From Macrostomum lignano (lineage: Eukaryota), in NCBI GenBank assembly GCA_002269645.1, contig NIVC01004235.1, positions 1 through 53,899 of the forward strand: a stretch of 53,899 nt of DNA, given 5' to 3'. Of the stretch, positions 13,690 through 49,840 are shown piece by piece. The notes under the pieces are model-generated. The model was not told where the DNA came from and did no database searches. It saw only the letters and a list, made by a program, of their open reading frames with translations. How positions within the stretch are numbered: position 1 is the stretch's first letter; every line of letters starts with the position of its first letter. The translations under genes and the position numbers were made by a program.

Positions 13690-14040
13690 TCACAATGAGA
13701 TTGTGAGGTCACCAGTCTAATCACAATGAGATTGTGAGGTCACCAGTCTAATCTCAATGAGATTGTGAGGTCACCAGTCTAATCTCAATGAGATTGTGAG
13801 GTCACCAGTCTAATCACAATGAGATTGTGAGGTCACCAGTCTAATCTCAATGAGATTGTGAGGTCACCAGTCTAATCTCAATGAGATTGTGAGGTCACCA
13901 GTCTAATCACAATGAGATTGTGAGGTCACCAGTCTAATCTCAATGAGATTGTGAGGTCACCAGTCTAATCACAATGAGATTGTGAGGTCACCAGTCTAAT
14001 CACACTGACTAAAGTGTCAGAGGCACTGGCTAAAGTGTCA
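13690..14040. repeat. 31-bp minisatellite (CAATGAGATTGTGAGGTCACCAGTCTAATCT)x~10 joined to ~2 degenerate units of the 21-bp family
   Basis: Same family as the SMPD1 intron 9/11 arrays; switches at ~14003 to CACTGACTAAAGTGTCAGAGGCACTG. Confidence 0.9.
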
Positions 14041-18900: not shown

Positions 18901-21900
18901 GATTTGGGAGGCTGGCCTAGCAACTGGGGATCTGGGAGGCTGGCCCAGCAACTGAGGATCTGGGAGGCTGGCCCAGCAACTTGAGGATCTGGGAGGCTGG
19001 CCCAGCAACTGAGAATCTGAGAGGCTGGCCCAGCAACTGAGAATCTGGGAGGCTGGCCCAGCAACTGAGAATCTGGGAGGCTGGTCCAGCAACTGAGGAT
19101 CTGGGAGGCTGGCCCAGCAACTGGGGATCTGGGAGGCTAGCCCAGCAACTGAGGATCTGGGAGGCTGGTCCAGCAACTGAGAATCTGGCAGGCTGGCCCA
19201 GCAACTGAGAAGTTGGGAGGCTGGCCCAGCAACTGAGAATCTGAGAGGCTGGCCCAGCAACTGACACTCTGGGAGGCTGGTCCAGCAACTGAGAATCTAA
19301 GAGGCTGGCCCAGCAACTGAGAATCTGGGAGGCTGGCCCAGCAACTGAGAATCTGGGAGGCTGGTCCAGCAACTGAGGATCTGGGAGGCTGGCCCAGCAA
19401 CTGAGGATCTGGGAGGCTGGCCCAGCAACTGAGAAGCTGGAAGGCTGGCCCAGCAACTGAGGATCTGGCAGGCTGGCCCAGCAACTGAGGATCTGGCAGG
19501 CTGGCCCAGCAACTGAGAAGCTGGGAGGCTGGTAGCCCAGCAACTGAAAATCTGATGGGCTGGCCCAGCAACTGAGGATCTGGGAGGCTGGCCCAGCAAC
19601 TTGAGGATACCCTACAAATAAGCACTATGAGCCATTCCTAAAGAACTCGATGATAAACAAACACGAGAAAGGCCCCTCTCACCGTAGGATTAGTAACCTT
19701 GAACAGAGTCTCCTGCAGTTCCCGAACTTTTTTAGCGTACTCAACTGACAGGTGATAGAGTTTAGTGCAGATTTTCTCTACCGACTCTTTAGCAGCCTCC
19801 TCAATATGCGGCTGGCAGGTTCGTTTCAGATGAGCCAACCGCTCCAGACAGTCTTCGTAGGTTGGCATTTTGGCCTGCCGCAGGAACTGATAGGTCTGCT
19901 CCACGTTCCATTTGACAATTTTGCGACTCTCCGGATTGGCTACGCGAGACTCAATCATGGCCTGCAGTGGGTGGATGGTCATCAGGTTATGCTGAGGTGA
20001 ATTTACTAAATGAGACCAACTACAGTGCTTATGGAAACACATTAGATAAGAAATAGCACACAGTGATTAAATATGAGAACTAGTGCACTCACTAAACCTA
20101 AGAAAGAGCCACTTATTAACCCAAAAGAAATGGCACCAATTGACCCCCCTCCCAAGAGAAATGGCACCCATTGACCCTCCCAAGGGAAATGGCACCCATT
20201 GACCCCTCAAGAGAAATGGCACCGATTGACCCCCCCCCCTCCCAAGAGAAATGGCACCGATTGACCTTCCCAAGGGAAATGGCACCCATTGACCCCCCAA
20301 GAGAAATGGCACTGATTGACCCCCGAGATAAATGGCACCCATTGACTCCCCTAGAGAAATGATACTCATTCACCCCCGAAATAAATGGCACCCATTGACC
20401 CCCCCCCCAAGAGAAATGGCACTGATTGACCCCCCGAGATAAATGGCACCCATTGACTCCCCTAGAGAATGATACTCATTCACCTCCGAAATAAATGGCA
20501 CCCATTGACTTCCCTAAAGAAATGGCACTCATTGACCCTTGAGAGAAATGGCACCCATTGACTCCCCTAGAGAAATGACACTCATTGACCCATAGGCCTT
20601 ATGAGAATCTTATAAGACTTAAGAGAAGAAAAGAAAAAATTAATAGCAAAGAAAGTAAATAATCTTAGAAAATAAATATTCACATACACACACTGTGCTA
20701 CTACAAGTAGTTTACTAACCTTGGACGCCTCAGCATACCGATAAAGCTGTTTCTTAGCATCGGCGCTAAGCTTAGGCCGGCACAGTCGCACAGGCAAATC
20801 GTTGATAATCTCCCTAAACAGAGCATAGCTCAATTCGTTATCGCAGTCGCTAGGAAACAGCGGATCCGAGCCTTTGTCGCTCAGGTATCGCTCAATTAAC
20901 CAACGATTGAAACTGTCAGGCGGCGGTTGAATGTTTTCCCTACTGACACACAGCTCCGAATAGTGCTGGCGCAGCTTCGCGATTAGCTGGGCCCTTAGTA
21001 GCTCAGTTTCCGGATGAGGCTGGAACAGTCTCCGGGGTGGCCGTTCCAGCGTCACGCAGTTGCTGTGCACGCTGAAGTTCCAGGCTGCGTCTGAGGGGGG
21101 CAACAGCAGGGCAATGGGCCAAGCTTATGGGAAATGCACAGGCTTGACGAGTGACAGTTTGACAATTGGAGAGTGACAATTGACGAGTGACAGTTTGACA
21201 ATTGGAGAGTGACAATTGACGAGGGACAGTTTGACAATTGGAGAGTGACAATTGACGAGTGACAATTTGACAATTGGAGAGTGACAATTGACGAGTGACA
21301 ATTTGACAATTGGAGTGACAATTTGATATTAAAGAGTGACAATTGACGAGTGACAGTTTGACAATTGGAGAGTGACAATTGACGAGTGACAATTTGACAA
21401 TTCGAGAATTGACGAGTGACAATCAGACAAATGGAGTGACAATTTGATATTAAAGAGTGACAATTGACGAGTGACAATTTGACAATTCGAGAATTGACGA
21501 GTGACAATCAGACAAATGGAGTGACAATTTGATATTAAAGAGTGACAATTGACGAGTGACAATTTGACAATTCGAGAGTGACAATTTGATATTAAAGAGT
21601 GACAATTGCCGAGTGACAATTTGATATTGGAGAGTTGATATTGAAGTATTGCGCCAAACGCTAAGCCGATTAGGCTATACAAAATCCGAGAGGATAAAAT
21701 ACTACTAAACGTATAATAGATCAGACGATTTTTCTGTACCTAGCTAATCCCAAAAATGGTTTTACTGTCACGTGCAAACGGTTTTGCAGCATAAGCCTAG
21801 GCTGATTTTAGGCTAGATATTTTTCAGCAGAGAAACCTAAACTAAAAAAACTATAATCTGAAAGTCGGCTGAATCAGGATGTTACAGACACTGCATTAAT

Positions 21901-22773
21901 ATGCGACAGACACTGTATTATGATGTAACAGACACTATTAGGATGTGACAGCCACTGTATAAGGATGTGACAGACACTATCAGGATGTGACAGCCACTGT
22001 ATAAGGATGTGACAGACACTATCAGGATGTGACAGACACTATATTAGGATGTGACAGCCACTGCATCAGGATGTGACAGAGCTTATATCAGGATGCGACA
22101 GACACTAAATGAGGATGTGACAGGCTGTATAATAATTTAGCAGTCACTGTATTAGGATGTGACAGACACTTTATCAATGATGGGACAGTCAGTTTTTAAT
22201 CTCTTTACCAAGCGCCTGAGGACCGCCAAAGCTTGGTCGCTTTGGAGCCGACGGTCCCTGCTGATGATGGTGATGGTGATGGTTGGGCACAGCAGCCGCC
22301 GGATCAGACAGGGTGCGTTTCACCCCGGGCAGTGCGGCAGTAGGCGGTTCCCACAGAGACTGATTAGTAAGCTTATTAAAATAGTAGGGCCGATTTTCGC
22401 GCTTAGACCAGAATTTCCTCCAGCCAGCAGCTAGCAGCTCTTCGCTGAGATCGTGAGAAGTGGCGCCGCTTCCTCCAACGCCTGCGGCGCCTCCCCCGGT
22501 GGCGCCAAAACCGGCGGCGCCCGGACTTCGAAACGGAGCGCCGGGAGCACCGCCGGGAGTCAACGGCGACGTGACGCAAGTTGAATCGAACGACGACGCG
22601 GTTGAAGAGCTGGACGGATGTCGTTCAGTGCGAATTGGCGCCAGAGGCGGCGGCGACGTGGTTGTCGACGAAGATGCCGACGGATCGACTGCGGACAGCA
22701 ACGGCGGCTGCTGCTCGGCCTGTCCCGAAGCCGGCGTCTCTGCCGCTGTGCTCGGAGGCGCATCGGTTGCCAT
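15901..22773 (-). CDS. PCIF1: PCIF1/CAPAM mRNA cap adenosine N6-methyltransferase, 7 exons, ~711 aa
   Basis: Exons 22773-22209, 21123-20720, 19961-19698, 18605-18316, 17474-17198, 16920-16745, 16060-15901; phases consistent, total 2136 nt. WW domain [28 protein letters not shown]; [19 protein letters not shown]; FASPLNCYF; catalytic NPPF; [15 protein letters not shown]. The exon 2 acceptor (AAG) is the least certain boundary. Confidence 0.93.
16155..16640. repeat. 21-bp minisatellite (CTGACCAACCTGTCTTCCCCT), PCIF1 intron 6
   Basis: About 23 pyrimidine-rich units. Confidence 0.92.
17625..18250. repeat. 56-bp higher-order repeat of TTAGGA-like hexamers, PCIF1 intron 4
   Basis: Unit TTAGGA TTAGGA TGAA TTAGGA TTGGGA TTAGCA TGGA TTAGGA TCAGGA TTGAGA, ~7 clean copies with degenerate flanks. 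Confidence 0.88.
18706..19607. repeat. 28-bp minisatellite (GGGAGGCTGGCCCAGCAACTGAGGATCT), PCIF1 intron 3
   Basis: About 32 units; palindromic core GCTGG-C-CCAGC. Confidence 0.95.
20125..20592. repeat. ~28-bp minisatellite (GAAATGGCACCCATTGACCCCCCCAAGA), PCIF1 intron 2
   Basis: Variable C-run; a block of several units is itself duplicated. Confidence 0.9.
21145..21630. repeat. 36-bp composite repeat (GACAATTGACGAGTGACAATTTGACAATTGGAGAGT), PCIF1 intron 1
   Basis: Built from GACAATT submotifs; begins ~20 bp from the exon 2 acceptor. Confidence 0.9.
21900..22180. repeat. 20/22-bp degenerate minisatellite (AGGATGTGACAGACACTATC), PCIF1 intron 1
   Basis: Alternating 20- and 22-bp units next to the exon 1 donor. 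Confidence 0.85.
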
Positions 22774-24499
22774 GGGAAACGCGGATCAAATATTGATAAG
22801 ACAAATAGATGCCGTTATTGAATAGGACGTCTTGTCAGGTTTTAAAATGAGATTAAAACATAGTGTTTTTGCATGAAATTTATTTCGAATACATTATCAG
22901 TCTCAGTAAAAATGACACGAGGGCTGGATAAGTAACAATTCTTGCAAACTTAACTCAAACAAAAATCTAACAAATTGAGAAAAAACACACTGGAGTAGCC
23001 TCAACTGTAGATAAATTTTGATGGAATAAGTTATTAAGGGTAAATAATTGGTGAATAAATAAATATTTTAAATATTCACTCTATAAAAGTGCAAATTATT
23101 GAACTTTAACCAGCCAGTGCAATATAGTTTTCCACAAAAATGAAGGAAAGTAATGAGGCTGAGGCACTGCCCAAAGCCAATTCAGACAACCAACTGTTTA
23201 AGAGACAGATCTTCTACTACCTACAAGAAATTTGACAGGTGAAAGAGGCATTTGACAGGCCTAGCTTAGCAGCTATGGTTTTCTATTGCAATAATGCACA
23301 TTTATTAATTCAAAATCAATCATCTGCGTTACTTTCCAGATCTGGCTGCCAAAATGTCAAAATTAATTTAAATACATTGTGAGAGGCCTCCTAGCAGAAG
23401 CCTATGTCCTGGCACTCAGGAGGTGGAGTGGATAGATCCATTGCATTAGACTTGGAGGGGGGCTATATTTTAAAAGTATTGTGTACCTACTTAGGGAGCT
23501 TAGATATGAGATCACTGACATCTGTTTTTAAGAATTACCTATAAAAATAGCAATTTTTTCTTTAGTCTCCCATATATTTTAGGCCTAAAATTGACGTATT
23601 TAGGCATATATGTGCAACCCCCCCCCCTGATTTACACTGGCCATGTGACTTACTTTTTGACCAAAAATGTGACTTACTTATGAAAGAAACCCTAAAGCAA
23701 ATGAATGCAATTTTGGGTAAATGGCAGGAGTAACTATGGCTGTCTTATTAAGGATAAATGCCTCATCATCTAATTAGTATTATGTTTGTATTCTTTGGGT
23801 AGGAATTTTTGCAAGTTACCCCTAGTCTACTACAATTTATGGTGGCTGGATTGGCTCTAGGTTGGCCAGCAGTTGTGCATGTATGTATTTAGGCATTGTT
23901 GCAAAGGTTTTGGCTCTTCTTGGCCTAGCTAGATATTTTTTTCAATATATAAAGGATAAAAAAGTTAAAAATGATATTAAGGTTAAGCATAAAAACGAAT
24001 TGGTCAAATAAAAAAGGTATGTTAAATTAGCATTCAGCAAAAAACTAGTTTTCAGCAAAATAATCACACTACACCTGTTTTTAGGCAAAATTTGAACTAA
24101 ATCGGTTGAGCCTTTTAGGAGATAATTGATTTCCTACAAACAAACAAGCAAGATTTTCATTTTTAGTATATGGATATATTATAAAAGTAATAAAAAAATA
24201 GGGATAACTATACAAACTAAAGGTTTTGTAACTTTTTTTAGTTTACTATTTTTTTATAAAGTAAGTTGTTTTTTACTTAGGCAAGGGCAAGTAAGATTTA
24301 GTATAGGTGGATGGACTAATAAAATAGAGTGCAAATAATAAATGGTTTTTAATTTTGAATTATTGCTTCTAATATATTAATACAATAGGAATTTCTATTA
24401 GATCTTTATTAATGTACCAGTAATTTTATAGTACATTAATGTACTATTAATTTGCCTAAAATTTTTCCTATGACAAAAAAATATAGCCATTTTGCTATT

Positions 24500-25892
24500 C
24501 TGCTTCTTAGGCTTATAGGCAATGACTAGGCCCCACTTTGGAAGGGTCTCTATCCTGAAGAAGGGCACCTCTACAAGCCTTGACAACCAATGCAGCATTG
24601 CACTGGAGTGCACGCTGCCAAAGCTGCTAAATGTAGTGTTGTGCAATTGGCTCCTTCCTGTCTTGAACTTGATGCTGCTTGGGCTACAAAGCAGCTTCAG
24701 GCCAGGCAGATCCACCACAGAGCAGATTGTCAAAACCTGCAAGACTCATCTTCAAGCCATGTCTATTGTCTTTATTGACTTCCGGAAGGCCTTTAACTCT
24801 GTCAGCAAGATGGCTTTAGCCTGGCTCCTGGCTCAGTATGGCATCTCCAACACCCTGGTGATGGCAGTTATGGACCTATACCACAACTCCAAGGCATTTG
24901 TTGACTCTAGCAATGGCTTTATGGACGAGTTTGATACCACTTCCGGGGTGCTGCAAGGGGACCTGCTATCTCCCCTGCTTTTCATTCTGGCTGTTGACTA
25001 CATCCTGCACTGCTGCCTTCGAGACAACAACAGCTTTATCCTTGCACCTCAGCGTAGCTCCTGTGATACTGCTATGATGCTCGCAGCCCTTGCCTATGCT
25101 AATAACATTGCGCTGCTATGCCAAGACCCTATAGCAGCCTAGCATACTCTTACTTGACTCTCCAAGGAAGGCATTTGGATCGGCCTGCAGATTAATGCAG
25201 GCAAGACAGAGATACTGCATGTGGGTGCTGACAATGCCCCACTGCTGACCCTGTCCAATGGCAAGGCCATCTCAATGTGCAGCGACTTCTGGTACTTAGG
25301 CACCCTCATGATGAGCCCAGAGGCAATCATTGTGGACAGGAGGACCCAGGCCTGGCACGCCATGCACCACCTCAAGCCAATCTTTACCTCTAGAGTATGG
25401 GACAACCTGAAGATCCACCTGTTCCTCGCTGCCATAGAGCCAAACCTTCTCTATGGCATGGAGGCTGTCCTGATGACAACCACGCGAAAGCAGGCCCTGG
25501 ACATGATGCACTGCAACCTGCTATATAAGGTGCTAGGCGTATGCTACTGGCAATCCTCCTGATGGCCCAGTTGATGGCAAGATCAAAATCGCTATTCCTT
25601 AGTGCCACCCTTTGCCAGCATCGCTAGGCCCTACTGGGACACTTCCTACAACAGTTCGCCTACAAGGGCAACAACCTGCTTGGACTGGCTGTTCTGCACC
25701 CACCAATCAAATGGTTCTCCTGCAGCTAAGGACAGACCCAGACCCTTTGAGACACTTGTTGCCAACTTGGAGGCAATTGGACTGACTTCCCAGACTGCTG
25801 CAACCTGCCCTGCCCCTTTTTTCTGCAATCGTGTGCACATTAGCGCCCCCCCCCCCTCAACCCTAGCATTGTTGTAATGTAATGTAATGTAA
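24500..25892 (+). mobile_element. Decayed, 5'-truncated RTE-like non-LTR retrotransposon (reverse transcriptase)
   Basis: RT motifs FRPGRSTTEQI, VFIDFRKAFNSV, GVLQGDLLSPLLFIL, LAYANNIALL (YADD position), GLQINAGKTE, FWYLG, LLYGME; in-frame stops at 25140, 25155 and 25560; 3' tail (TGTAA)4 at 25873-25892. Confidence 0.88.
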
Positions 25893-27431
25893 TACTAGGC
25901 CCTATGAAAATAACATGCTTTGGGTTTGCTATTTAGGCCCTATAGGCTATATGCTTAAAATCTTATCTTATGCAAGCATATTAGTTTTATGCATTCATTG
26001 GAGAAAGAACTATTTTGTTATTTATACAGCCACTGGAGCAATAACAACTGCCTAGTATTTAAAGGGTAGGCCTAGTTTAAAGCCATAAAGAGACAAAACT
26101 GGATGCTTAATTTAATACAGTGTGTCAACATGTCAATTAAAATAAAAAAATCTAATATATTATTTTTAAGCCTCTACATTCTCTATAATGTGCCTAGGGA
26201 GGGGGGCTATATTTGATTTGTCATGTCATGCCAGTGCCAGGTATCCAGTCAATCCGGCGCCAATGAATCAGGCGATGGCATGCATAGTAGCATGACATGA
26301 GTCATGACAGCAAATACAAAAGTTTATAAAACTTGATGGTATCGGGTGAATGGAAACTAAACAAATTTTAGCATCAAAATATTTTGTGAAAAGTGGTTGT
26401 CACTGCTACCATTCTATTTAACATAAACAGAAAACACGTCTAGGTATTAAAAATACTGCTTTAATAACCACAAAAGCCTGCTGGAAGTTTTTTTCCATGA
26501 AAAACATTTATGTTCGTAATACTCGTTTAAGAGTAAACAAGAAAAGCCTGTATAACAAACATTAACTTTTGTCAGCAGTGATATAATTTTAATTTTTTTA
26601 ATCGAACTTTAATTTTTTTAACAGTTTCTAAAAAGTGCTACTAAAACATTTAATTAAAAAACAATGATTTGTACATACGCTTTACAATTCTAAATTCCAG
26701 GATCCAGTGCAATTCAAATTCGAGTCATTCCATATTGAATGAAGAAGAAAGTAAGTCAGTAAGTGTTGTTTGGTGTGCTTACTAGGCCCTAATCTTAGTA
26801 CCAGAGGTTAGACTGAAGGCTAGCTAGCTGCATTTCGTTAATCTTTATCGTTAATAGTACCCACTACAGCCGTTAATTTTTTGTTGCAATTAGGGCCTAT
26901 TATAATTTATTCTTTCTTTCGGTCTATCAATTATGTAATAATTTATAAAGGCTTGTGTGCCAGTCTGCCAGGCCAGAGTGTAGATTTAACAAAAGAAAAA
27001 ACACTGGCTGAGTGACTTTTTGTGAACGATAAAGTGTTTATAAGCACTTATTAGTCCGAAACTATTGTTCAGATAAACTAAGAAAGAAAAAAAATAGAGT
27101 GAAGTCATAGGTCTACTCTGTCTAGTTAGTCTAGTAGTATTGATAGCAGATAGGTGTAATTAAATAAACACAGTCAGTATTTTCATTTTCTACTAAACAA
27201 AGAGCAACAGCCAAAGCTTGATATGAATAAAGTAAATGTTTTTGGACATAAAAGTGGGACACTAGGAAAGGTCAACAAAGTGTTTGAAATAGAAACTGGG
27301 TAAGCTTTTTAATGATATTTAATTTTTTTTTATCAATTTTTTAGGCCTATTACATGTTCTTTGAAATTATGCTTTTGCTATATTATATTCTGCTAGTTGT
27401 CTAGTTATTTTATTTGCTATGTTATAATTAA

Positions 27432-29052
27432 GGCAGTTGTTAGGCTTATTTGTCCAGTAGTGTTCCGCCGCCGCGAGTTTTGACCTCCGTAACCGTAACC
27501 GTAGCCGTAAGAAAGAAGCAACTTCCGTAGCCGAATTTTGCCGTCATTACGGGCTAAAAAAGTCCGTAACCGTAATTTGCCGTAACCGTAGTTGTAATGT
27601 ATAACAAAAATTGATTTTTTGCATGAAAAGTAGGGCAGACAGAAAAGGACAGATAAAAAGGATAAAAGGATAGCAATAAAACCTACTTGTTGTTCATTCA
27701 TGCATTAATATTCATTTATTTTTTTGTAAATATAATATCTTTATCGAAGTATTCTATAGCATTGTTGTATGCAATTGTGTGCTTGGTGCCTTTTTCAGTT
27801 TTCTGTGTTGTGATTCTGTTTTGTTTTGCTACAATATGAATATATGACTGACGTGCCAAGGTCAATGTGTATGTTTAATATCATTAAATAAATATATGAA
27901 TTTGTTCAAATGAATTTTGAAATTTTGTTCAAAAACTGCTTCAAAATTTCCTATGACTAAAAAATTGCATGTTACATTTTTTCATTTTCATTTTATTGCA
28001 TTGTCTATTGTATTGTCTTCTTTGGTTTCAATCAATTTTCAATCATAATTCATATTCTTATCCTATTAGTATTTATTTAGTATTTCCTTATTAATATTCT
28101 TTCATCCTTATCCTCATAATCTAAATCTAATATCCTATTTTTATGCTAAGGAGCTAAATGCTACATATGGCTAAGAAATAAGAATGCCAGATTCTTAGTC
28201 TCTTGTAGGCTTTGACTGGCTCTCTCTGTCTCGCTGCTATCATGCTATCGCCATGCTATGCTATGCCGTATGCCTAATGAGAAAATTCGTGAAAAAATTC
28301 GTTTTTCATTTTCAAGAAGTTTCGTAGATATTTAGAAACTTAACAAATATAAAAAATAATAATAACTAGTAAAACAAAATGAAAACTGGTTGAAGTTGAT
28401 ATAAAAAAATTCTTTTATAACACTAAACAGTTAAAAATAAATAATTTTACGGCAAATTAATTACGGCAAGTCTAGAAAAATCTCCGTAATCCGTAACCGT
28501 AACCGTAAGCTCAAAATATGTCCGTAACTGTAATCCGTAATGAAAATATGGCTTCAAAAGTGTCGTAGCCGTAATTTGCCATAGCCGTAGCCATAATTAC
28601 GGCGGAACACTATTGTCCAGTGACTGGACAAATAGCAATGTGGTTATTACTTATTTGTCCAGTTACTAGATAATGACCATGCTTTCCTATTCATCCAGTT
28701 AATACCAGACAAATAGGCATTTTGTTATTTGTCCGGTAAAATAGATAATTGCTAAAATATCTATTTCATAAAAACTACAAGGGTAATATTCATAGACTTC
28801 AAAGACTTCTTACTCATATCTTGATTATTATGTTGTTATACTAGTGTGTCTTATACACCAAATTATGCCAAACTGAATACACTGCTTTGCTTATACTAGT
28901 ATAGAAGAAAATTAATCAGTATACGAGAATGAGAAAAGGTCTTAAAAATCTAGAATATTCATCACGAAACAAATAGATACTTGTGTTAGCAATTTAACCG
29001 GACAAATAGCAAAAAGGCTATTCGTCTGGTCACCGGACAAATAACAACTGCC
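27432..29052. mobile_element. MULE/Mutator-like non-autonomous element interrupted by a hAT MITE
   Basis: Ends GGCAGTTGTTA..TTATTTGTCC / GGACAAATAACAACTGCC; identical 9-bp flanks TATAATTAA (27423-27431 and 29053-29061); internal TTATTTGTCCRG repeats in both orientations. About 460 bp without the insert. Confidence 0.75.
27458..28612. mobile_element. hAT-family MITE, 1155 bp
   Basis: Perfect 13-bp TIR TAGTGTTCCGCCG / CGGCGGAACACTA; perfect 8-bp TSD TTGTCCAG (27450-27457 and 28613-28620); clustered subterminal CCGTAA/CCGTAG motifs at both ends; no transposase ORF. Confidence 0.9.
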
Positions 29053-29818
29053 TATAATTAAATGCCCAGTTAGCCTAAAGACATTCTTTCATCTTATAGT
29101 ACCTATATCCTATTGTATAGCTTAGTTTTGTTATACAAAATTGTAAGTAAGAAGTAAAAAAGAGAATAATAAGAATTGAAATAAATGTAGCCAGGTGCAA
29201 AAATCCTACTCATAGTTTATTAAAGCATAGTCCTTATATTCACTTTTATTATAGGGCCTATAATATTCTTAATAGACAATTTGTTAAAACAAAAGTATAA
29301 TTGTTAATCAATTTGTTAGTTAACTGTTAAGGTTAATAGTATATTATAAAATAAAAGTAAGGGGATACCAAGTTGGGGTTTCATGTGCTAATGTATACTC
29401 TACTTATTATTAAATTTTGCACTAATATCTTTGCTAATCTGGGTTTTATTTTTTGCCAGAGACAAGGTGCAAAATCGTACCCTGTGCTTAATTTCAGGTC
29501 TCAGAGTGCAATTTCTCTATTTTCTAATTTCAAGGCAGTGCAAATGAGGTTTTAATGAAAAAATAGGTTATGAGACCATACTTAAACCGCACCCACTTTT
29601 CAATTTCTAGGTGCAATTTTAAAATTTAGGGTGCATATGCACACTCTACGCACAAAAAAATAAACCCAGTTTGCTATTTTCTTTTAGGAATTTCAATTGC
29701 AGTACCCTGTAATGACTTTGTCTATTTGTTCCAATGACTGTCTTTTTGACATTGATTATGATAATGGCTAGATGCGAAATTAAAAGAGTTTTGCTTAATT
29801 TGTTAGACTTAACATTTT

Positions 29819-30755
29819 GGGTACAGGTCACATTGGCAAAAAGACATTTTGGCAAAAGCCAATTGAACTGATATATCAGAATTTAAAATTGTACCTAGTG
29901 TAAATAAAAGTCTAATCAAGAATCAATTCAATCAAAGCCAATTTAGTAAAGCTAAGTATACACAAAACTTAATAGCTACTGCAGTAACAATAATACATGT
30001 ATTCTATATACATTATTATTCTAGTTTAATCTATGTACATATATATTGTACATCTAGCATACATATATGTGATGATTTTAACATGTATTTAGATTGGAAG
30101 CAAGCATTATAAAAACTACTAGCAATACATATATGCATATATGATGTTGCAATTTATAGTGCATAATGAGGCGGAATGCCCTTTTATTTCAATAGATAGA
30201 ATGGGAGCAAAGAGTTTTATGCTGCTTTGTACATATATTTATATTTACACAAACTGCACGAGATTCATGAGGGGCCTAGGGAGGTGCAAATAGGTGGCAT
30301 GGCATGATAGGCTATGCCAATCCCCTGGCTTAGCAAGCCAGCTAGCAGTGTGCAACCACCCCATCTCAGCTAGATAGAGGTTGGAGGGGTTTCTAGTGTG
30401 GCTGCATTGGTGCTACCAGTCGCATACAGTCTGGCCACCACAATATAGTGCTTCATTGTATATTCACAGTTATATGCAATTAATGTTTGATGTTTACATT
30501 TAAACAAATATAGTATCAGAAAATGATACTAATATACTTATATACCATACAAATTACAATATGCTAAGTTATAACTTTTAAATACTAGGTACATATAGTT
30601 CAAATATACTGCCATATACACAAAGTAATTTGGTCAATCAATGATTAAGGTTCCCGCTATTTGTTAACCCCTTTCACTGAAGTGACTAATAATATCTAAC
30701 TCAAGCCTAAATGCCCTTTGCCAAAAGGTCTTTTTTGCCAAAATGACTGTAACCC
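29819..30755. mobile_element. MITE-like element with imperfect ~40-bp TIRs
   Basis: Left end GGGTACAGGTCACATTGGCAAAAAGACATTTTGGCAAAAG; right end reverse-complement GGGTTACAGTCATTTTGGCAAAAAAGACCTTTTGGCAAAGG; flanks AACATTTT / AACATTTC (7/8 match). Confidence 0.6.
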
Positions 30756-30954
30756 AACATTTCTATCTTTACTTTTGTAATATAATACCCCCAATGAACA
30801 TCTTTAATTATAGGCATTAAGTATTATGAAACAAAAGTAAATATAAGGATCCTGTTCTATAAACTTATGTCTTCACTACCGTGACATAACCTCTATTTTT
30901 TAGGACTTCCATTTCTTTATATCTAAATATACTAAATCTTTAAGGTTTATATAT

Positions 30955-30956
<2 letters not shown>

Positions 30957-31036
<80 letters not shown>
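30957..31036. repeat. (GCTT)20 microsatellite
   Basis: Perfect tetranucleotide run. Confidence 0.97.
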
Positions 31037-31038
<2 letters not shown>

Positions 31039-31769
31039 CCATAATGCACTAGAGTTTGCTTGCCTTGACCAATTTTCTTCAAATTTTATACTATTTTCCA
31101 TTGGGAAAATATGGATATTGTAAGATAAAAGAGTGCCAAAAGACAAATAATGTTATACTAAACTAAACTTAAAGGGAATATAATTTAATGTCTTCATATT
31201 CTACAATGCATATGCTTTTTAATTTTAATACTCTAATATTTTAGCATCCTAGTTTGCTTTTTGATTCCTTAGGCCTAGCTTAATAAGGGTTACAAGAAAA
31301 TTTTCCAATAAAAATATACATTGATATGTCATGGTATGGATCTTAGGCCCCCTATTAAAAGGTTTTTAAAGATATATATTTCATAAATATTGGTCTAAGA
31401 ATAAAAAAACTTTGATTATTTACTAAAATAAAATACTATTTTTTATTTTTTGAAGGAAAAAATCCTTTGTTTTTCCCATTTTTAATTGCTCACTGGACCC
31501 TCTAACCTTGGTTTGTACTAGAAAGTTTCTAATATGATAAATTACCTTTTGAACTTAAGTATTAGTCATTTTCTTAAACTTATTTTGCTTGTTTATTATT
31601 TCAAAAATCTGGTTTTACATTGAAATTGATATTGTAGCTTATATGTTAGTAACTAGTATGTCTTCCCTAGAGCTAATTGTTTAGGGCAGTAACACACTCT
31701 CTTAGTCCTGGTGTGTCCAGTGATTCTAATTCAATTTTATCACAAGGCTTCTTTTTTATTAATTTTTAG

Positions 31770-34700
31770 GCTGCAGCTTGTAGTGCAAAACAGTGGATAC
31801 AGCAGTGGACAAAGGGCGCATCCTCAGGTTGGCCATTTCACCCAGGTAGCTTTTGATCAGTCTGGGCAGCGCCTTCTGGCTGCCGATCATCTCGGCCACT
31901 TTTATCTGTTCGACTTTGGACGCGGCAGGTTTGTGTAAACTTTTTTAAAGTATGCTTGCTTGGAAGTCTCAGATACAATTCGCTAGTCTCTTTCATCTAA
32001 TGGGTCAGTGAGCTCTCCCCAGCAGCTCGCACCACGACAGCCCTGCTCAGCAACATTAGTTTGGAGCTTCTGTGTCAGGGCCGTTGTTAATGTGTGCGCT
32101 CTACTCTCTCCCCACGAGAGGGGTTGTAGGGACTGTACTGTAGCCGTGGGTTCGATTCCCGATCCCACTCGGAACACTTAACTCTGCATTCCTTCAGTTC
32201 ACCCAGCTGTAAAATGGGTGCCAGCATTAGCTGGGGTAATTGAGGGTGTGTGGCGACCCCCAGTCCTTGGAATAGCTGCGGCTGAGCTGTCGGTTGCACA
32301 TCTGCCTATTAGGGCAGGTGTAATCAATTATTATATAATTATATCATCTGTCCCCAGATTCGAGCACGTCCTGCACACCCGTCACCCGTGCACTGCGCTC
32401 TCCTTCGGCCTCCGAGATCGTCGCCAATTTCTCGCCGCCTTAGCCGACGGCGATGTCCGCCTGCTGGCAATCGGGCAGAGCGGCTCGGGGCCCGCCAGCG
32501 AGCTGGCAACTCTCAGCGGGCACTCTGCCGCAGTTACTGGCATCAGCCCTCATTCTGGCGGTCGCTACGTGCTCACCACAGATCCCGACGTCACCCTGCT
32601 GTGGGATGTCGACGCTCGGTCTAGACTGCGTCGGTTGAGCGTACGCGAAGATGTGCAGTTATTGCTAGCCAGCTTTGTGCCAACTAGGAATTTGATCTTG
32701 ACCGCCTTTCGCGACGACAGCCTGTTTCTGTGGGACTCGGAGACGCTGCAGTGCAGGGGTCAGCTGCCCACTCCGCCGCCGCCTCTGCAGCTGTCCGGAT
32801 TGTCCACTGGCGCTGAGGGTAAGTGGCCGGATGCCAATATGTCAGACGGGATTATCTCTGGTGCGGCTCTTGCTTTTTTAATCCTGTGACTCTTTGTTCT
32901 TTTCTGATGATTGTTTTCCTCTTATTTCAGGCCTAAGACTTTGTTTTGATATTTTCCAGCCCATTGTTCTCCTATTGTTCAGGCTCTTTGTTCTGGTGTT
33001 ATTCCAACTCTTTATTCTTATGTTTTTCCAACTTAGTCCGACTCTTTGTTCTGGTATTATTCAGGCTCTTTGTTCTAATACCTATTGTTCCAACTCTTTG
33101 TTCTGGTATTATTCTGACTCTTTGTTCCTGTTTTATTCAGGCTCTTTGTTCTGGTACCTATTGTTCCGTCTCTTTGTTCTGATATTATTCCGACTCTTTG
33201 TTCTGGTGTTTTTCCGACTATTTGTTCTGGTGTTTTTCCGACTCTTTGTTCTGGTGTTTTTCCGACTCTTTGTTCTGGTGTTTTTCCGACTCTTTGTTCT
33301 GGTGTTTTTCCGACTATTTGTTCTGGTGTTTTTCCGACTCTGGTCTGGTACCTAATATTCCAACTCTTTGTTGTGGTACTCCTTTATGTGTCACTCCTTT
33401 AAACGTGGCAATAATCGATCCGTCAGTCTTTGTTTAACCTATCACTCATTTATGTATTCAATATGCTTTCTCTTAGATTTTCACTCAATTTTGACTCGCT
33501 ACTCGCTAACCAGTCATTCCCTCTGGCAAAATATCCACAGCCGAGCTGGGCCCTCGCTATCGCAGCCTGGACTTCACACCCGACGGTCGCCAGCTAGTAG
33601 CCTGCGGTCGAACTCGACAGGTGCACGTGTGGGATCTGGATAGCCTGCAGATGGCCAGGGTTCTGGAGCTGCCAGCTAGTGTGGGAATGCAACTCTGCCC
33701 GCTGAGACAGGTGATGAGGGAGTGCAGCTGGATTCATTTATCAGATTTTTTAGGTTCAGGTGATTTGGTTTCAGATTTTGTAGGTTCAGGTGATTTGGTT
33801 TCAGATTTTGTAGGTTCAGGTGATTTGGTTTCAGATTTTGTAGGTTCAGGTGATTTGGTTTCAGATTTTGTAGTTTCAGGTGATTTGGTTTCAGATTTTG
33901 TAGTTTCAGGTGATTTGGTTTCAGATTTTGTAGGTTCTGGTGATTTGGTTTCAGATTTTGTAGGTTCAGGTGATTTGGTTTCAGATTTTGTAGGTTCAGG
34001 TGATTTGGTTTCAGATTTTGTAGGTTCAGGTGATTTGGTTTCAGATTTTGTAGGTTCAGGTGATTTGGTTTCAGATTTTGTAGGTTCAGGTGATTTGGTT
34101 TCAGATTTTGTAGGTTCAGGTGATTTGGTTTCAGATTTTGTAGGTTCTGGTGATTTGGTTTCAGATTTTGTAGGTTCAGGTGATTTGGTTTCAGATTTTG
34201 TAGGTTCAGGTGATTTGGTTTCAGGTTTTGTAGGTTCAGGTGATTTGGTTTCAGATTTTGTAGGTTCAGGTGATTTGGTTTCAGATTTTGTAGGTTCAGG
34301 TGATTTGGTTTCAGATTTTGTAGGTTCAGGTGATTTGGTTTCAGATTTTGTAGGTTCAGGTGATTTGGTTTCAGGTTTTGTAGGTTCAGGTGATTTGGTT
34401 TCAGATTTTGTAGGTTCAGGTGTGATTTGGTTTCAGATTTTGTAGGTTCAGGTGATTTGGTTTCAGATTTTGTAGTTTCAGGTGATTTGGTTTCAGATTT
34501 TGTAGTTTCAGGCGATTTGGTTTCAGATTTTGTAGGTTCAGGTGATTTGGTTTCAGATTTTGTAGGTTCAGGTGATTTGGTTTCAGATTTTGTAGGTTTA
34601 GGTTTGCAGACTCCATGTGAAACATGAATTTACTTTGACTTCTCCACACCTGTCAGGTGGCCTTTGCCAGCTCGCCTGACGCTGTCAGATCCGTGAATTT

Positions 34701-37700
34701 GCCTGAAACTGAAGCTGATGCTGGATTGAATTCTTCATCTTCGGCCCAGCATCAGCGGCGGTCACTTGCTCTACTAGCCGTGGCGCATTCGGGCGGCGTT
34801 GTCTGCGTCAGCCTGGGCGCCGGCGGCGGCAGGTCATCCGGTGCAACCCTGACCAATCGGCTGCAATCGGCCGATAGTCACGTGACCAGACTGGCCGTGA
34901 CAAAAGATCGCCTAGCATTGGTAAACTCTGGGCAGCTGTTGATCCACTGTCTGACTACCGCGCTGAGACCCGAATCTGCCAGGGCGGCCATGAGTGCCAG
35001 GGCGGCCGCCAATGCCGCAGCTGCTGCCGCGGCGGCCGCTGATGCCGCAGCCTGGCCGGCGACTGAGCCCGTGACGGATCGGACAGACCGGACTGCTGCG
35101 ACAGCTACTGACTCCGGCGGAGACACTGGCAGGACCTATACGATTGTGTCTGGCAAGGCTGCTGCTGCTGGGGGCGGGGGTAAGAACGTGTCTTCACATT
35201 GTCAAACTTCTCAAGTTTTAAGCTTGTGAGTTATAAGTTAATAAGTTACCCTAGGCAAGCTAGTGACCTGAAATTTCATTATTCAGGTGCGAGTTGAGCC
35301 GAGATTAGCCTTGACATCTCAGCAATTCCCCCTATGAGCCTTGGCATCTCAGCAATTCCCCCCATGAGCCTTGGCATCTCAGCAATTCCCCCCATGAGCC
35401 TTGGCATCTCAGCAATTCCCCCCATGATCCTTGGCATCTCAGCAATTCCCCCCATGAGCCTTGGCATCTCAGCAATTCCCCCATGAGCCTTGACATCTCA
35501 GCAATTCCCCCCATGAGCCTTGGCATCTCAGCAATTCCCCCCATGAGCCTTGGCATCTCAGCAATTCCCCCCATGAGCCTTGGCATCTCAGCAATTCCCC
35601 CATGATCCTTGGCATCTCAGCAATTCCCCCATGAGCCTTGGCATCTCAGCAATTCCCCCATGAGCCTTGGCATCTCAGCGATTCCCCCATGAGCCTTGGC
35701 ATCTCAGCAATTCCCCCATGAGCCTTGACATCTCAGCAATTCCCCCATGAGCCTTGACATCTCAGCAATTCTCCCATGAGCCTTGGCATCTCAGCAATTC
35801 CCCCCATGAGCCTTGGCATCTCAGCAATTCCCCCATGAGCCTTGGCATCTCAGCAATTCCCCCCATGAGCCTTGGCATCTCAGCAATTCCCCCATGAGCC
35901 TTGACATCTCAGCAATTCCCCCATGAGCCTTGACATCTCAGCAATTCTCCCATGAGCCTTGGCATCTCAGCAATTCCCCCATGAGCCTTGGCATCTCAGC
36001 AATTCCCCCATGAGCCTTGGCATCTCAGCAATTCCCCAAGATCCTTGACATCTCAGCAATTCCCCATGAGCCTTGGCATCTCAGCAATTCCCCCATGAGC
36101 CTTGGCATCTCAGCAATTCCCCCAAGATCCTTGACATCTCAGCAATTCCCCCATGATCCTTGACATCTCAGCAATTCCCCCATGATCTTCGACATCTCAG
36201 CAATTCCCCCATGAGCCTTGGCATCTCAGCAATTCCCCCATGAGCCTTGACATCTCAGCAATTCCCCTCCCCCCCATGATCTTCGGCATCTCAGCAATTC
36301 CCCCATGAGTAGGCAAACTGATACATATGCATTTACTTCATTTCAGTGTCTCCAACAAAGTCTTCAAAGCAGCAATCGCAGCAGCAACAGCAGCAGCAGT
36401 TGCCGCAGCCCCAGCCGCTAAATCGCAAGAGGCTGCGAGCCATACTGCAGGAATTCGGACAGTTTCCTGGAAAATACCGCCTATTAATTTGGAAGACTCT
36501 GCTTCAACTGCCAGAGAACACCGCCGCTTTTAATGCGCTCTATAACAAAGGCATCCATCCCGCGTTTCTCACTCTGCAAGACCGATTCCCTCTGCGTAGC
36601 AACAAGCTGGGCAGGGTGTTGCAACGGTCTCTGAGCTGCGTAGCTTTCTGGAGTCCTCTGTTTGGCGAGGCCGACTATCTGCCTTTGCTAGCGTTTCCGT
36701 TCGTTAAACTGTTTCAAAATAGTCAACTGCACTCTATGGAAGTGCTCATGACTGTGCTCACTAACTGGTGCGGTCATTGGTTCGAATATTTTCCCAATCC
36801 GCCATTGAATATTCTGGCAATCATTGAGAATCTAATTGCCTATCACGATAAGGAGCTCTATGCTCACCTGTGCGCCAGGGGTGTCACCTCGGAGATTCTG
36901 GCTTGGCCGCTGTTGCAGACTCTGCTTACGGAAGTATTGACTAGAGAAGAATGGCTTTCCGTGTGGGACTGCCTGCTGTGCCATCCGCCAGGCTATCTGC
37001 TGTACTTTGTGGCCGGGTTTACTCTGCTGAGTAGGGGGCCGCTGCTGCGCGCTACTGAGGTTTGTTAATAAGTAGTATCTGTCGTGTGCTTGAGTGTGAA
37101 CCGTTTTCTTAATGCTTGTTCAGAGATTTCTGTTTTAACTGTGGGATTTTGGATACAAATTATGTAAATTCGGGATCTGCAATATGGCATTCCGGATCTG
37201 CAATATGGGAATCGAAATCTGCAATATGGGATTCGGGATCTGCAATAATTTGATTCGGGATCTGCAATATGGGATTCGGGATTTGCAATATGAGATTCAG
37301 CATTTGCAATAATTGGATTTGGGATCTACAATATGGGATTCGAGATCTAAAATAAGGCATTCGGGATCTGCAATATGGGATTCGGGATCTGCAATATGAG
37401 ATTCGGGATCTGCAATATGAGATTCGGGATCTGCAATATGAGATTCGGGATCTAAAATAAGGGATTGGGGATCTGCAATATGGGATTCGAGATCTAAAAT
37501 AAGGCATTCAGGATCTCCAAAATGGGATTCGGGATCTGCAATATAAGATTCGAGATCTGCAATATGAGATTCTGCATCTGCAATATGGGATTCTGGATCT
37601 GCAATATGAGATTCGGGATCCGCAATATGAGATTCTGGATCTGCAATATGAGATTCAGGATCTACAATATGAGATCCTGGATCTGCAATATGAGATTCGG

Positions 37701-40009: not shown

Positions 40010-40067
40010 GGCGCTGAGCTTTGAGGGGTGATCCAATAAGTAGGAAAAATATTCAAGTGCGAATATG

Positions 40068-40472
40068 GATGGCAATATTGTCTATGACTTTGAGTGAAGA
40101 GTGAATGGCAATATTGTCTATGGCTTTGAGTGAAGAGTGAATGGCAATATTGTCTATGACTTTGAGTGAAGAGTGAATGGCAATATTGTCTATGGCTTTG
40201 AGTGGAGAGTGAATTGCAGTATTGTCTATGGCTTTGAGTGAAGACTGAATGGCAATATTGTTTATGGCTTTGAGTGGAGAGTGAATGGCAATATTGTCTA
40301 TGGCTTTGAGTGGAGAGTGAATGGCAATATTGTCTATGGCTTTGAGTGGAGAGTGAATGGCAATATTGTCTATGGCTTTGAGTGGAGAGTGAATGGCAAT
40401 ATTGTCTATGGCTTTGAGTGGAGACTGAATGGCAATATTGTCTATGGCTTTGAGTGAAGAGTGAATGGCAGT
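40068..40472. repeat. 36-bp minisatellite (GAGTGAATGGCAATATTGTCTATGGCTTTGAGTGGA)x~11
   Basis: Starts ~60 bp after the TBC1D31 stop; palindromic CAATATTG core. Confidence 0.95.
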
Positions 40473-49805: not shown

Positions 49806-49840
49806 CCGTCTCTCTCTCTCTCTCTCTCCCTCTTTCCCTC
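49806..49840. repeat. (CT)n microsatellite
   Basis: Short CT run. Confidence 0.8.

What the first reader, a model, noticed from the sequence alone, without database searches (positions are those of the whole stretch)
23100..31700. Sharply bounded CpG-depleted transposon block: possible repeat-targeted hypermutation
Between the CpG-rich PCIF1 first exon and TBC1D31, CG nearly disappears. By eye there are about 4 in 23.1-24.5 kb, about 20 in the ~50% GC RT (1.4 kb) and about 12 in 29.0-31.7 kb, versus over 20 in a 0.9-kb AT-rich stretch at 15.0-15.9 kb. TA-containing words (CCTAGG, CTAG, TATA) are abundant. The block is almost entirely TE remnants, while genes and intronic minisatellites keep their CpGs. 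This points to a genome-defence process marking TE blocks, either dense cytosine methylation with deamination or a RIP-like mechanism, which is established in fungi but not, to my knowledge, in animals.
Basis: partly seen in the sequence, partly recalled or inferred. Interest (0 to 1): 0.85.

Follow-up and report, generated by a model that had tools for sequence, protein, structure and literature searches.

The report
CpG-decayed transposon spacer in a flatworm
Two stretches of junk DNA between two flatworm genes have lost about 80-85% of their CG dinucleotides through the mutation pattern that DNA methylation leaves, not through a fungal-style repeat-mutation system, which makes this an ordinary mechanism seen in a species whose methylation map is unknown.

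Summary
The window is contig NIVC01004235.1 of the flatworm Macrostomum lignano (assembly Mlig_3_7).

With tandem repeats masked, CpG observed/expected (o/e) is:
- Sub-block A (22919-26254): 0.18.
- Sub-block C (29035-31816): 0.15.
- Sub-block B (26255-29034): 0.85, or 0.53 without two CCGTAA repeat clusters.
- The rest of the window: 0.89.

The deficits in A and C are far beyond chance (P about 1e-26 and 1e-14).

The only element with relatives for comparison is a 5'-truncated LINE reverse transcriptase (RT) fragment (24519-25895), and it shows what happened:
- At family-conserved residues it carries 31 C:G>T:A transitions against 1 A:T>G:C. Of these, 23 are at CpG, split 12 C>T and 11 G>A.
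- Ten arginines became Cys, His, Gln, Trp or stop; none of nine relatives shows this.
- Third-codon C or G is lost only next to G or C. It is not lost in CpA/TpG (the RIP context) or TpC (the APOBEC context).
- Intact relatives have CpG o/e 0.93-1.02.

This is the footprint of germline 5-methylcytosine deamination. Published reviews say M. lignano keeps DNMT1 and DNMT3. RIP is rejected. Whether transposable elements (TEs) as such are the target, and the TE origin of most of A and C, remain unproven.

The parts
22189..22773 (-). PCIF1 first coding exon (ATG at 22773; WW domain), CpG-rich left flank of the spacer
   Evidence: Pfam WW 6e-10. The downstream ORF 20582-21103 matches PDB PCIF1 6IRV at 1.8e-42. 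CpG o/e is 1.27 for 22300-22773.
22919..26254 (.). Sub-block A: strongly CpG-depleted (24 CpG, o/e 0.18)
   Evidence: A-left 22919-24518 has o/e 0.10, the LINE 0.22, and 25896-26254 has 0 CpG against 10.5 expected from base composition (c*g/n).
24519..25895 (+). 5'-truncated, dead non-LTR (LINE) reverse transcriptase fragment with a 3' (TAATG)n tail at 25875-25894. The reading frame is broken by stops at 25140 and 25155, frameshifts near 25554 and 25745, in-frame stops inside the shifted segment, and an 18-nt in-frame deletion.
   Evidence: RVT_1 3e-12. Homologues reach 57% aa identity. tblastn frames are. It is the only RT-like stretch in the window.
26255..29034 (.). Sub-block B: not depleted overall (58 CpG, o/e 0.84), and 0.53 without the CCGTAA clusters
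27443..28634 (.). MITE-like element. Its inverted ends are TTATTTGTCCAGTAGTGTTCCGCCG and CGGCGGAACACTATTGTCCAGTGACTGGACAAATA. Subterminal CCGTAA/CCGTAG repeat clusters at 27460-27600 and 28440-28610 hold 29 CpG (o/e 1.96).
   Evidence: Read from the sequence. There are 17 intact CCGTA and 4 intact TACGG motifs, against 5 TpG/CpA variants.
28704..29044 (.). Palindromic element carrying the ACCGGACAAATA motif. Decayed copies of the same motif (CTGG, TTGG) lie at 25998 and 26033 in sub-block A.
   Evidence: Inverted repeat I1 and self-match 28704-29030. The alignment of 25960-26100 with 28960-29100 shows all 3 CpGs of the B/C copy as TG or TA in the A copy. Motif list.
29035..31816 (.). Sub-block C: strongly CpG-depleted (9 CpG, o/e 0.14), with a CpG-free run of 937 bp at its right end
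29814..30760 (.). Second MITE-like structure: inverted arms 29814-29864 and 30709-30760 (81% over 53 nt)
   Evidence: (I4, I5, I8). No CpG in either arm.
31770..31929 (+). TBC1D31 coding exon (AG acceptor, no ATG), where CpGs resume. It is the right flank of the spacer.
   Evidence: Sequence. TBC1D31 identity comes from UniRef-named hits to 36346-37068 and the called gene model with WD40 + RabGAP-TBC. The first CpG after the gap is at 31817.

Best explanation
The roughly 8.9-kb spacer lies between the divergently transcribed PCIF1 and TBC1D31 genes of Macrostomum lignano. It is old, largely non-coding DNA that contains a dead LINE fragment and small inverted-repeat elements.

Two parts of it (A and C, 6.1 kb together) have lost about 80-85% of their CpGs. 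The loss came through CpG>TpG and CpG>CpA transitions that accumulated where the DNA now lies.

The most likely cause is that this DNA has been densely CpG-methylated in the germline, by the DNMT1/DNMT3 system the species is reported to retain. Spontaneous deamination of 5-methylcytosine to thymine then removed the CpGs at roughly ten times the rate of other substitutions.

The middle part (B) is less decayed, probably because it holds younger insertions. The flanking genes, exons and introns alike, show no such decay and were presumably unmethylated in the germline.

**Shown:** the deficit and its boundaries; for the LINE, the direction, context and strand symmetry of the substitutions, and that they post-date the element's death.

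**Inferred:** that methylation is the cause; that the AT-rich parts of A and C decayed in the same way; that B is younger.
For: 1. **The deficit is real and matched for GC.**
2. **Changes at conserved residues of the LINE copy.** At 152 family-conserved residues the copy differs at 42. Of 37 single-step changes, 23 are CpG transitions (12 C>T, 11 G>A), 8 are other C:G>T:A, 1 is A>G and 5 are transversions.
3. **Leave-one-out control.** The window copy has 31 GC>AT against 1 AT>GC, and 10 Arg>Cys/His/Gln/Trp/stop. Nine relatives have 0 such Arg losses.
4. **Opportunity-corrected test.** CpG sites make up 33% of the nonsynonymous C:G>T:A opportunities but take 23 of 31 hits (binomial P 2.5e-6).
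5. **Ancestor-free test at third codon positions.**
   - C before G is 0.19, against 0.66 in three intact relatives (P 1.8e-10).
   - G after C is 0.12, against 0.48 (P 9e-5).
   - C before A, C or T (0.70-0.82) and G after A, G or T (0.61-0.77) are not lower than in relatives.
6. **Relatives and simulation.** Intact relatives have RT CpG o/e 0.93-1.02 at 57-60% GC. The window copy has 0.22 at 52% GC, with TpG+CpA o/e 1.49. Simulating 78% CpG-only decay of the relatives reproduces GC of 0.51-0.54 and TpG+CpA of 1.46-1.59.
7. **The changes post-date insertion.** The copy is 5'-truncated. Conserved and catalytic residues were hit (YADD>YANN, not at CpG; Arg>stop at 25155 by a CpG transition).
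8. **Non-LINE DNA of A shows the same direction.** All three CpGs of the motif copy at 28998-29034 are TG or TA in the copy at 25998-26034.
9. **Flanks lack the signature.** Exons have o/e 0.58-1.27 and unique non-coding DNA 0.74-0.93. Between the two near-identical contigs, CpG transitions are only about 2.6x other transitions (10 events).
10. **Literature.** M. lignano retains DNMT1 and DNMT3 and has low-level 5mC (PMC11292947, PMC9246332, PMC10658182).
Against: - No methylation data were available here, so the link to 5mC is an inference from the mutation spectrum.
- The direct substitution evidence covers only 1.4 kb of the 6.1 kb that is depleted. For A-left and C no ancestor is available.
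- In the AT-rich parts the TpG+CpA excess is small (o/e 1.13-1.15, against 1.11 outside and 0.99-1.07 in B). That is less than a recent in-place decay from o/e 0.89 would give.
- A and C share further dinucleotide peculiarities that CpG decay explains only in part: GA/TC o/e 0.70, CC/GG 1.3-1.4, and an excess of the word GTGCA.
- An inverted-repeat element inside the spacer keeps CpG o/e 1.96 in its subterminal repeats, and the SINE-like element at about 32.1 kb keeps its CpGs. So not every repeat here is decayed.
- Reported 5mC levels in the adult worm are low.
Confidence: 0.75

Rival explanations
1. The AT-rich parts of A and C arrived already CpG-poor. For example, they could be fragments of repeat families whose source copies are CpG-poor, or DNA of different compositional origin. 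They would then not have decayed at this locus, and only the LINE fragment would carry a local decay record.
For: A and C share a dinucleotide signature of their own: GA/TC o/e 0.70, CC/GG 1.3-1.4, GpC 1.5 and enrichment of GTGCA. CpG-only decay does not fully reproduce it. The TpG+CpA excess is weak in the AT-rich parts. No ancestor or other copy could be found.
Against: The LINE embedded in A decayed after insertion. The motif copies in A are TpG/TpA versions of CpG-bearing copies 3 kb away. Depletion runs through unrelated sequence types right up to both gene flanks. A CpG-poor source family would itself most simply be explained by methylation.
Confidence: 0.15
2. A RIP-like, duplication-triggered cytosine-to-thymine hypermutation acted on the repeats, as in Neurospora and other fungi.
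For: TpA/ApT is 0.99-1.07 in A, B and C, and TpA o/e is higher in the spacer than elsewhere. Five of the 8 non-CpG transitions at conserved residues lie in CpA/TpG context.
Against: (CpA+TpG)/(ApC+GpT) is 1.33-1.90 and the composite index is negative. TpG+CpA is in excess, not deficit. At third codon positions C before A and G after T are retained as in intact relatives. TpA/ApT is just as high in the non-depleted part B. No second copy of the block sequences is seen in the 75 kb available.
Confidence: 0.02
3. An APOBEC/AID-type deaminase edited the LINE cDNA or DNA during retrotransposition.
For: There is a strong overall C:G>T:A excess (31 against 1).
Against: The changes are strand-symmetric (12 C>T, 11 G>A at CpG) and confined to CpG. 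C after T is 0.61 against 0.66, and G before A is 0.86 against 0.68 in relatives, so TpC/GpA sites are not depleted. The non-LINE DNA is depleted too.
Confidence: 0.02
4. The deficit is a by-product of low GC content or chance.
For: A-left and C have only about 31% GC, so absolute CpG numbers are expected to be low.
Against: o/e corrects for base composition. GC-matched outside windows have a median of 0.83 and a minimum of 0.37, against maxima of 0.19-0.25 in A and C. Poisson P is 1e-26 and 1e-14. The 51%-GC LINE is equally depleted.
Confidence: 0.01

Closest known systems
CpG decay of methylated DNA by 5-methylcytosine deamination, as in vertebrate bulk DNA and old LINE/SINE copies next to CpG-island promoters (established knowledge)
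   Same: There is a CpG-specific, strand-symmetric loss to TpG/CpA at roughly ten times the background rate. Arg codons are lost to Cys/His/Gln/Trp/stop. The depleted DNA is bounded by CpG-rich gene 5' regions. Other contexts show no loss.
   Different: Here the depleted fraction is the exception, not the rule. Unique DNA in the rest of the 54-kb window, including introns, has o/e about 0.89. The species is an invertebrate with reportedly low global 5mC.
Mosaic invertebrate methylation: gene-body methylation and, in some species, methylation of TEs (described in PMC11292947)
   Same: It shows a patchwork of depleted and non-depleted DNA in a species that keeps DNMT1 and DNMT3.
   Different: The footprint is the reverse of the canonical invertebrate pattern. 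The gene bodies here (PCIF1, TBC1D31, a C2H2 zinc-finger gene, a glycosyltransferase) show no CpG deficit, while the TE-bearing spacer does. Only one locus was examined.
Repeat-induced point mutation (RIP) of fungi
   Same: It concerns C:G>T:A transitions that inactivate a repeated element, with TpA/ApT near 1.
   Different: The context is CpG, not CpA. TpG/CpA is in excess rather than deficit and the composite RIP index is negative. No duplicated partner is seen.

Membership tests
5mC-deamination CpG decay | CpG observed/expected well below that of equal-GC sequence of the same genome | tested here: met
   A 0.18 and C 0.15 against 0.89 outside. GC-matched windows: 0.12-0.18 against a median of 0.83.
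5mC-deamination CpG decay | Reciprocal excess of TpG+CpA | tested here: inconclusive
   Clear in the LINE (1.49, against 0.97-1.11 in relatives, matching the simulation). Only 1.13-1.15 against 1.11 in the AT-rich parts.
5mC-deamination CpG decay | Polarised substitutions are CpG>TpG and CpG>CpA in similar numbers (strand symmetry) | tested here: met
   12 C>T and 11 G>A at CpG among 37 single-step changes at conserved residues. P 2.5e-6 against opportunity. LINE only.
5mC-deamination CpG decay | No comparable loss of C/G outside CpG | tested here: met
   Third-position C/G fractions in non-CpG contexts are equal to or above those of relatives.
5mC-deamination CpG decay | Genome encodes maintenance and de novo CpG methyltransferases | not tested
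   The genome could not be searched with these tools. Reviews state that DNMT1 and DNMT3 are retained in M. lignano (PMC9246332, PMC11292947). The primary paper (Wasik 2015) was not readable here.
5mC-deamination CpG decay | The surviving CpGs of the region are methylated in the germline | not testable with these tools
   Needs bisulfite or long-read methylation data.
RIP (fungal repeat-induced point mutation) | C>T preferentially at CpA, giving a TpA excess and a CpA/TpG deficit: (CpA+TpG)/(ApC+GpT) about 1.03 or less, composite index above 0 | tested here: not met
   Index 1.62 (A), 1.33 (C), 1.90 (LINE). Composite index -0.63, -0.26, -1.13. CpA/TpG sites are retained.
RIP (fungal repeat-induced point mutation) | Acts on sequences present in two or more copies in the genome | tested here: inconclusive
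   No other copy in the window or in 21 kb of the sister contig. The rest of the genome was not searchable.
APOBEC/AID-type editing | Strand-biased C>T or G>A in TpC/CpC (GpA/GpG) context | tested here: not met
   Symmetric and CpG-bound. TpC and GpA third positions are not depleted.
Non-LTR retrotransposon (LINE) | RT domain of the RVT_1 type, 5' truncation, 3' end with a simple-repeat tail, no LTRs | tested here: met
   RVT_1 3e-12. Homology starts at residue ~250 of ~690-aa relatives. (TAATG)n at 25875-25894. No flanking direct repeats. The endonuclease part is absent from this truncated copy.
MITE / TIR DNA transposon (27443-28634) | Terminal inverted repeats, target-site duplication, many genomic copies | tested here: inconclusive
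   Inverted ends and subterminal repeats were read from the sequence. A target-site duplication was not established and the genomic copy number was not testable.

The most novel reading that the evidence does not exclude
In Macrostomum lignano the sparse 5mC made by DNMT1/DNMT3 is directed at transposon-rich intergenic DNA rather than at gene bodies. This free-living flatworm would then use a TE-silencing type of CpG methylation, with CpG-normal unmethylated genes. That departs from the canonical invertebrate gene-body pattern and comes from a phylum where most studied lineages have lost DNA methylation altogether.
Probability: 0.35. Interest if true: 0.6.

Novelty: new member of a known kind. 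Interest (0 to 1): 0.35.

Why it matters
[quoted passage not shown] M. lignano is one of the few flatworms that kept DNMT1 and DNMT3.

This locus gives a clear evolutionary footprint. Some DNA in its germline has been methylated heavily and for a long time. At this locus that DNA is a TE-bearing spacer, while the neighbouring housekeeping-type genes show no footprint.

That yields a cheap, sharp prediction for existing bisulfite or long-read data and for DNMT knock-down in a transgenic-ready model. It also removes the more exotic claim of an animal RIP-like system.

Tried and rejected
1. **Reaching the same spacer on the sister contig NIVC01000392.1.** This would have allowed polarising recent substitutions.
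   - The look-up needs an exact gene product within 10 kb. The PCIF1 exon-1 ORF and the RT ORF are not on record.
   - The TBC1D31 products differ between the contigs (1009 vs 1000 aa), so the spacer stayed out of reach.
   - The sister contig differs by only 0.7% in unique sequence, so the test would have had low power anyway.
2. **TE coding remnants outside the LINE.** Six-frame Pfam scans of 22920-24520 and 29051-31770 found nothing. tblastn of 24 RT proteins and two neighbouring ORFs found only the one LINE.
3. **Dispersed repeats.** The block shares no dispersed repeats with the rest of the window or the sister contig.
4. **RNA genes.** Rfam and tRNA scans of the window found none.
5. **A corrected error.** I first read the RT as free of frameshifts. 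tblastn showed a shifted segment at 25556-25744 and an 18-nt deletion, and the analysis was redone on the three in-frame pieces.
6. **RIP and APOBEC contexts.** Both were tested explicitly and rejected.
7. **CpG-only decay as the sole cause of the GA/TC and CC/GG signature of A and C.** It explains this only in part, and the remainder is unexplained.
8. **The primary paper on M. lignano methylation (Wasik et al. 2015).** It could not be opened, so only reviews are cited.
9. **The M. lignano proteins** were not returned by the homology search, so DNMT genes could not be inventoried.


Full report
**Origin of the window**

An intact 396-aa ORF (45448-46638, minus strand) is on record on two contigs of assembly GCA_002269645.1. 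One of them, NIVC01004235.1, is 53,899 bases long and is the window itself.

The accession series NIVC00000000 is the Mlig_3_7 genome of the free-living flatworm Macrostomum lignano (PMC5730564).

The second contig, NIVC01000392.1, carries the same gene order. In about 13.6 kb of aligned unique sequence it differs by 94 substitutions (0.7%), and otherwise by indels and minisatellite length. This fits the redundancy reported for the assembly: 180 Mb in duplicated blocks at least 95% identical.

- PCIF1 has a WW domain in exon 1, and a downstream ORF matches PDB 6IRV at 1.8e-42.
- TBC1D31 has UniRef-named hits and a gene model with WD40 and RabGAP-TBC domains.
- They are transcribed divergently, so the finding covers the spacer between their 5' ends.

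**Check of the observation**

About 21% of the window is minisatellite, and an array has or lacks CG simply according to its unit. I therefore masked tandem arrays before comparing.

| Segment | Coordinates | CpG observed | CpG o/e | Poisson P against outside rate |
|---|---|---|---|---|
| Outside the spacer | rest of window | - | 0.89 | - |
| A | 22920-26250 | 24 (120 expected) | 0.18 | 1.6e-26 |
| B | 26251-29050 | 59 (62 expected) | 0.85 | not significant |
| C | 29051-31810 | 9 (55 expected) | 0.15 | 2.4e-14 |

- In GC-matched 500-bp windows (GC<0.40) the outside median is 0.83 with a minimum of 0.37. The maxima in A and C are 0.19 and 0.25.
- All CpG-free gaps of 250 bp or more outside the spacer are minisatellites.
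- So the deficit is real and unusual for this locus, but it consists of two sub-blocks, not one.
- Half of B's CpGs sit in two CCGTAA repeat clusters (o/e 1.96). The remainder of B is intermediate at 0.53.
- The boundaries are as sharp as CpG spacing allows. The last CpG on the left is at 22918, about 150 bp upstream of the PCIF1 ATG. The first on the right is at 31817, inside a TBC1D31 exon.

**What the spacer contains**

- The only coding remnant is a LINE reverse transcriptase fragment at 24519-25895 (RVT_1).
  - It is 5'-truncated: homology begins near residue 250 of roughly 690-aa relatives.
  - It ends in a (TAATG)n tail.
  - It is dead: stops at 25140 and 25155, a frameshifted segment at 25556-25744 with further stops, and an 18-nt in-frame deletion.
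- B holds a roughly 1.2-kb element with inverted ends and subterminal CCGTAA repeats (27443-28634), and a palindromic element at 28704-29044.
- C holds a pair of 53-nt inverted arms about 850 bp apart (29814-30760).
- Six-frame Pfam scans of the rest of A and of C found nothing. No part of the spacer recurs elsewhere in the 75 kb available.
- "Almost entirely TE remnants" is therefore plausible but shown for only about a third of the spacer.

**Mechanism, from the LINE copy**

The copy was 5'-truncated on arrival, so it has evolved without selection since insertion. Any departure from residues that are invariant in the family records mutation at this locus. I aligned its three in-frame pieces with nine relatives (34-57% identity).

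*Changes at conserved residues*
- At 152 columns conserved in at least 80% of relatives, the copy differs at 42.
- Of 37 single-step changes, 23 are transitions at CpG (12 C>T, 11 G>A), 8 are C:G>T:A elsewhere, 1 is A>G and 5 are transversions.
- Ten conserved arginines have become Cys, His, Gln, Trp or stop.

*Leave-one-out control*
- The same procedure applied to each relative gives no such arginine losses and no directional bias (0-9 GC>AT against 0-7 AT>GC).
- The window copy gives 31 against 1.

*Opportunity-corrected test*
- I used the DNA of three intact relatives.
- CpG sites make up 33% of the nonsynonymous C:G>T:A opportunities at these columns, but they took 23 of 31 hits (P 2.5e-6).
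- That is a per-site rate about 6-fold higher before any correction for saturation.

*A test that needs no ancestor*
- Among pyrimidine third positions, C is kept at 0.19 when the next base is G. It is kept at 0.70, 0.79 and 0.82 before A, C and T.
- The relatives show 0.66 before G, and 0.78, 0.58 and 0.71 in the other contexts (P 1.8e-10 for the G context).
- Among purine third positions, G is kept at 0.12 after C, against 0.48 in relatives (P 9e-5). After A, G or T it is kept at 0.61-0.77, not lower than in relatives.
- Survival of about 0.27 at CpG, against no measurable loss elsewhere, implies a rate difference of roughly an order of magnitude.

*Composition*
- Intact relatives have CpG o/e 0.93-1.02 at 57-60% GC. 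The window copy has 0.22 at 52% GC, with TpG+CpA o/e 1.49.
- Simulating 78% CpG-only decay of the relatives reproduces those values.

From established knowledge, a CpG-restricted, strand-symmetric, roughly tenfold-elevated transition rate is the signature of 5-methylcytosine deamination. Unmethylated genomes show at most a small CpG effect.

**Rivals**

*RIP*
- RIP predicts CpA>TpA, a TpG/CpA deficit and a positive composite index.
- Observed instead are a TpG/CpA excess, an index of 1.33-1.90 and composite values of -0.26 to -1.13.
- CpA and TpG third positions are retained as in relatives.
- TpA/ApT near 1 is shared by the non-depleted part B, so it is a property of this AT-rich spacer, not of the depletion.

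*APOBEC-type editing*
- It predicts strand bias and a TpC context. Neither is seen.

*GC content or chance*
- Excluded.

*Imported composition (the remaining serious rival, partial)*
- The AT-rich parts of A and C may have been CpG-poor on arrival.
- In its favour, TpG+CpA excess there is small (1.13-1.15 against 1.11 outside).
- Also in its favour, A and C share other dinucleotide peculiarities that CpG decay explains only in part: GA/TC 0.70, CC/GG 1.3-1.4 and an excess of GTGCA.
- Against it, the motif ACCGGACAAATA and a neighbouring CpG, present at 28998-29034, appear as TpG or TpA versions at 25998-26034 in A (3 of 3 sites).
- Also against it, depletion runs through unrelated sequences up to both gene flanks.

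**Why B is different**
- Its CCGTAA motifs are about 80% intact: 17 CCGTA and 4 TACGG, against 5 TpG/CpA variants.
- The rest of B has o/e 0.53.
- Differences between its two subterminal repeat regions are again largely CG against TG/CA (family D3).
- The simplest reading is the same process acting for a shorter time on younger insertions.
- Protection of B from methylation cannot be excluded.

**TE-targeted or position-dependent?**
- This single locus cannot tell.
- The flanking genes show no footprint. Exons have o/e 0.58-1.27, mostly 0.9-1.0, and unique non-coding DNA has 0.74-0.93.
- Between the two contigs, CpG transitions are only about 2.6 times other transitions in the flank (10 events).
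- A SINE-like element about 300 bp beyond the right boundary keeps its CpGs.
- TBC1D31's first recognisable exon (31770-31929) starts at an AG acceptor and has no ATG. Part of C may therefore be intron or outron rather than intergenic. The genome paper reports that 38.8% of M. lignano genes are trans-spliced.

**Comparison with what is known**
- The mechanism is the classical one. Reviews state that M. lignano retains DNMT1 and DNMT3 and has low-level 5mC (PMC11292947, PMC10658182). [quoted passage not shown]
- I found no later paper describing it in the library searched.
- The footprint here, a depleted TE-bearing spacer next to CpG-normal gene bodies, is the reverse of the canonical invertebrate gene-body pattern. 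It resembles TE- or heterochromatin-directed methylation.
- That is a lead from one locus, not a finding about the genome.

**Verdict**
- The methylation-deamination reading is supported and the RIP-like reading is rejected.
- This is a known kind of process seen in a species where it has not, to my knowledge, been described.
- Interest is moderate (0.35). A specialist would not be surprised by the mechanism. The implied target preference in a flatworm is directly testable with existing data.

Noticed in passing
window 36255-53899 vs L003 (NIVC01000392.1, record 379188-400378): The right third of the window recurs on a 635-kb contig with the same gene order. Substitution divergence in unique sequence is only 0.7%. 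Most differences are indels and minisatellite copy number. TBC1D31 is predicted as 1009 aa on one contig and 1000 aa on the other. This is a haplotig or a very recent duplicate, in line with the assembly's reported redundancy.
   Followed up: partly
window, 23 arrays (e.g. 11663-12710, 18742-19608, 33741-34603, 35307-36309, 37168-38279): About 21% of the window is minisatellite (periods 14-36), much of it inside introns of PCIF1 and TBC1D31. Arrays at 6541-7242, 7566-7957 and 13689-14008 share a related 31-bp unit. Several long ORFs in the window are only translations of these arrays.
   Followed up: partly
window 2882-3589 (+) and 4828-5538 (-); also 1035-1705 vs 2915-3589: There is an inverted duplication of a secreted-looking gene of about 235 aa with a weak PAN domain. 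The arms are 652 nt at 94% identity, and a further set of inverted repeats lies to the left.
   Followed up: partly
window ~32090-32230 (+) and ~2400-2560 (-): Two tRNA-derived SINE-like copies have a B-box-like GGTTCGATTCC and share a 45-nt core (GCACTTAACTC.GCATT.CTTCAGTTCAC.CAGCTGTAAAATGGGT). The copy next to the depleted spacer still carries several CpGs. ARAGORN and Rfam call nothing there.
   Followed up: partly
window 31770-31929: The first recognisable TBC1D31 coding exon begins at an AG acceptor and has no in-frame ATG. An upstream coding exon must therefore lie somewhere in or beyond the spacer. It was not located.
   Followed up: no
window 22919-26254 and 29035-31816: The two depleted sub-blocks share further compositional oddities besides CpG. 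GA/TC o/e is 0.70 (0.97 outside), CC/GG is 1.3-1.4 (0.89 outside), GpC is about 1.55, the word GTGCA occurs 19 times against 5.6 expected, and TAGGC 20 times against 7.8. Simulated CpG decay explains only part of this.
   Followed up: partly
window 27460-27600 and 28440-28610: Dense clusters of CCGTAA/CCGTAG hexamers (CpG o/e 1.96) sit just inside the inverted ends of a roughly 1.2-kb element. They look like subterminal transposase-binding repeats of a DNA transposon family. The transposase and superfamily are unknown.
   Followed up: partly
window 30955-31037: There is a perfect (TTGC)n microsatellite of 20.8 copies inside sub-block C.
   Followed up: no
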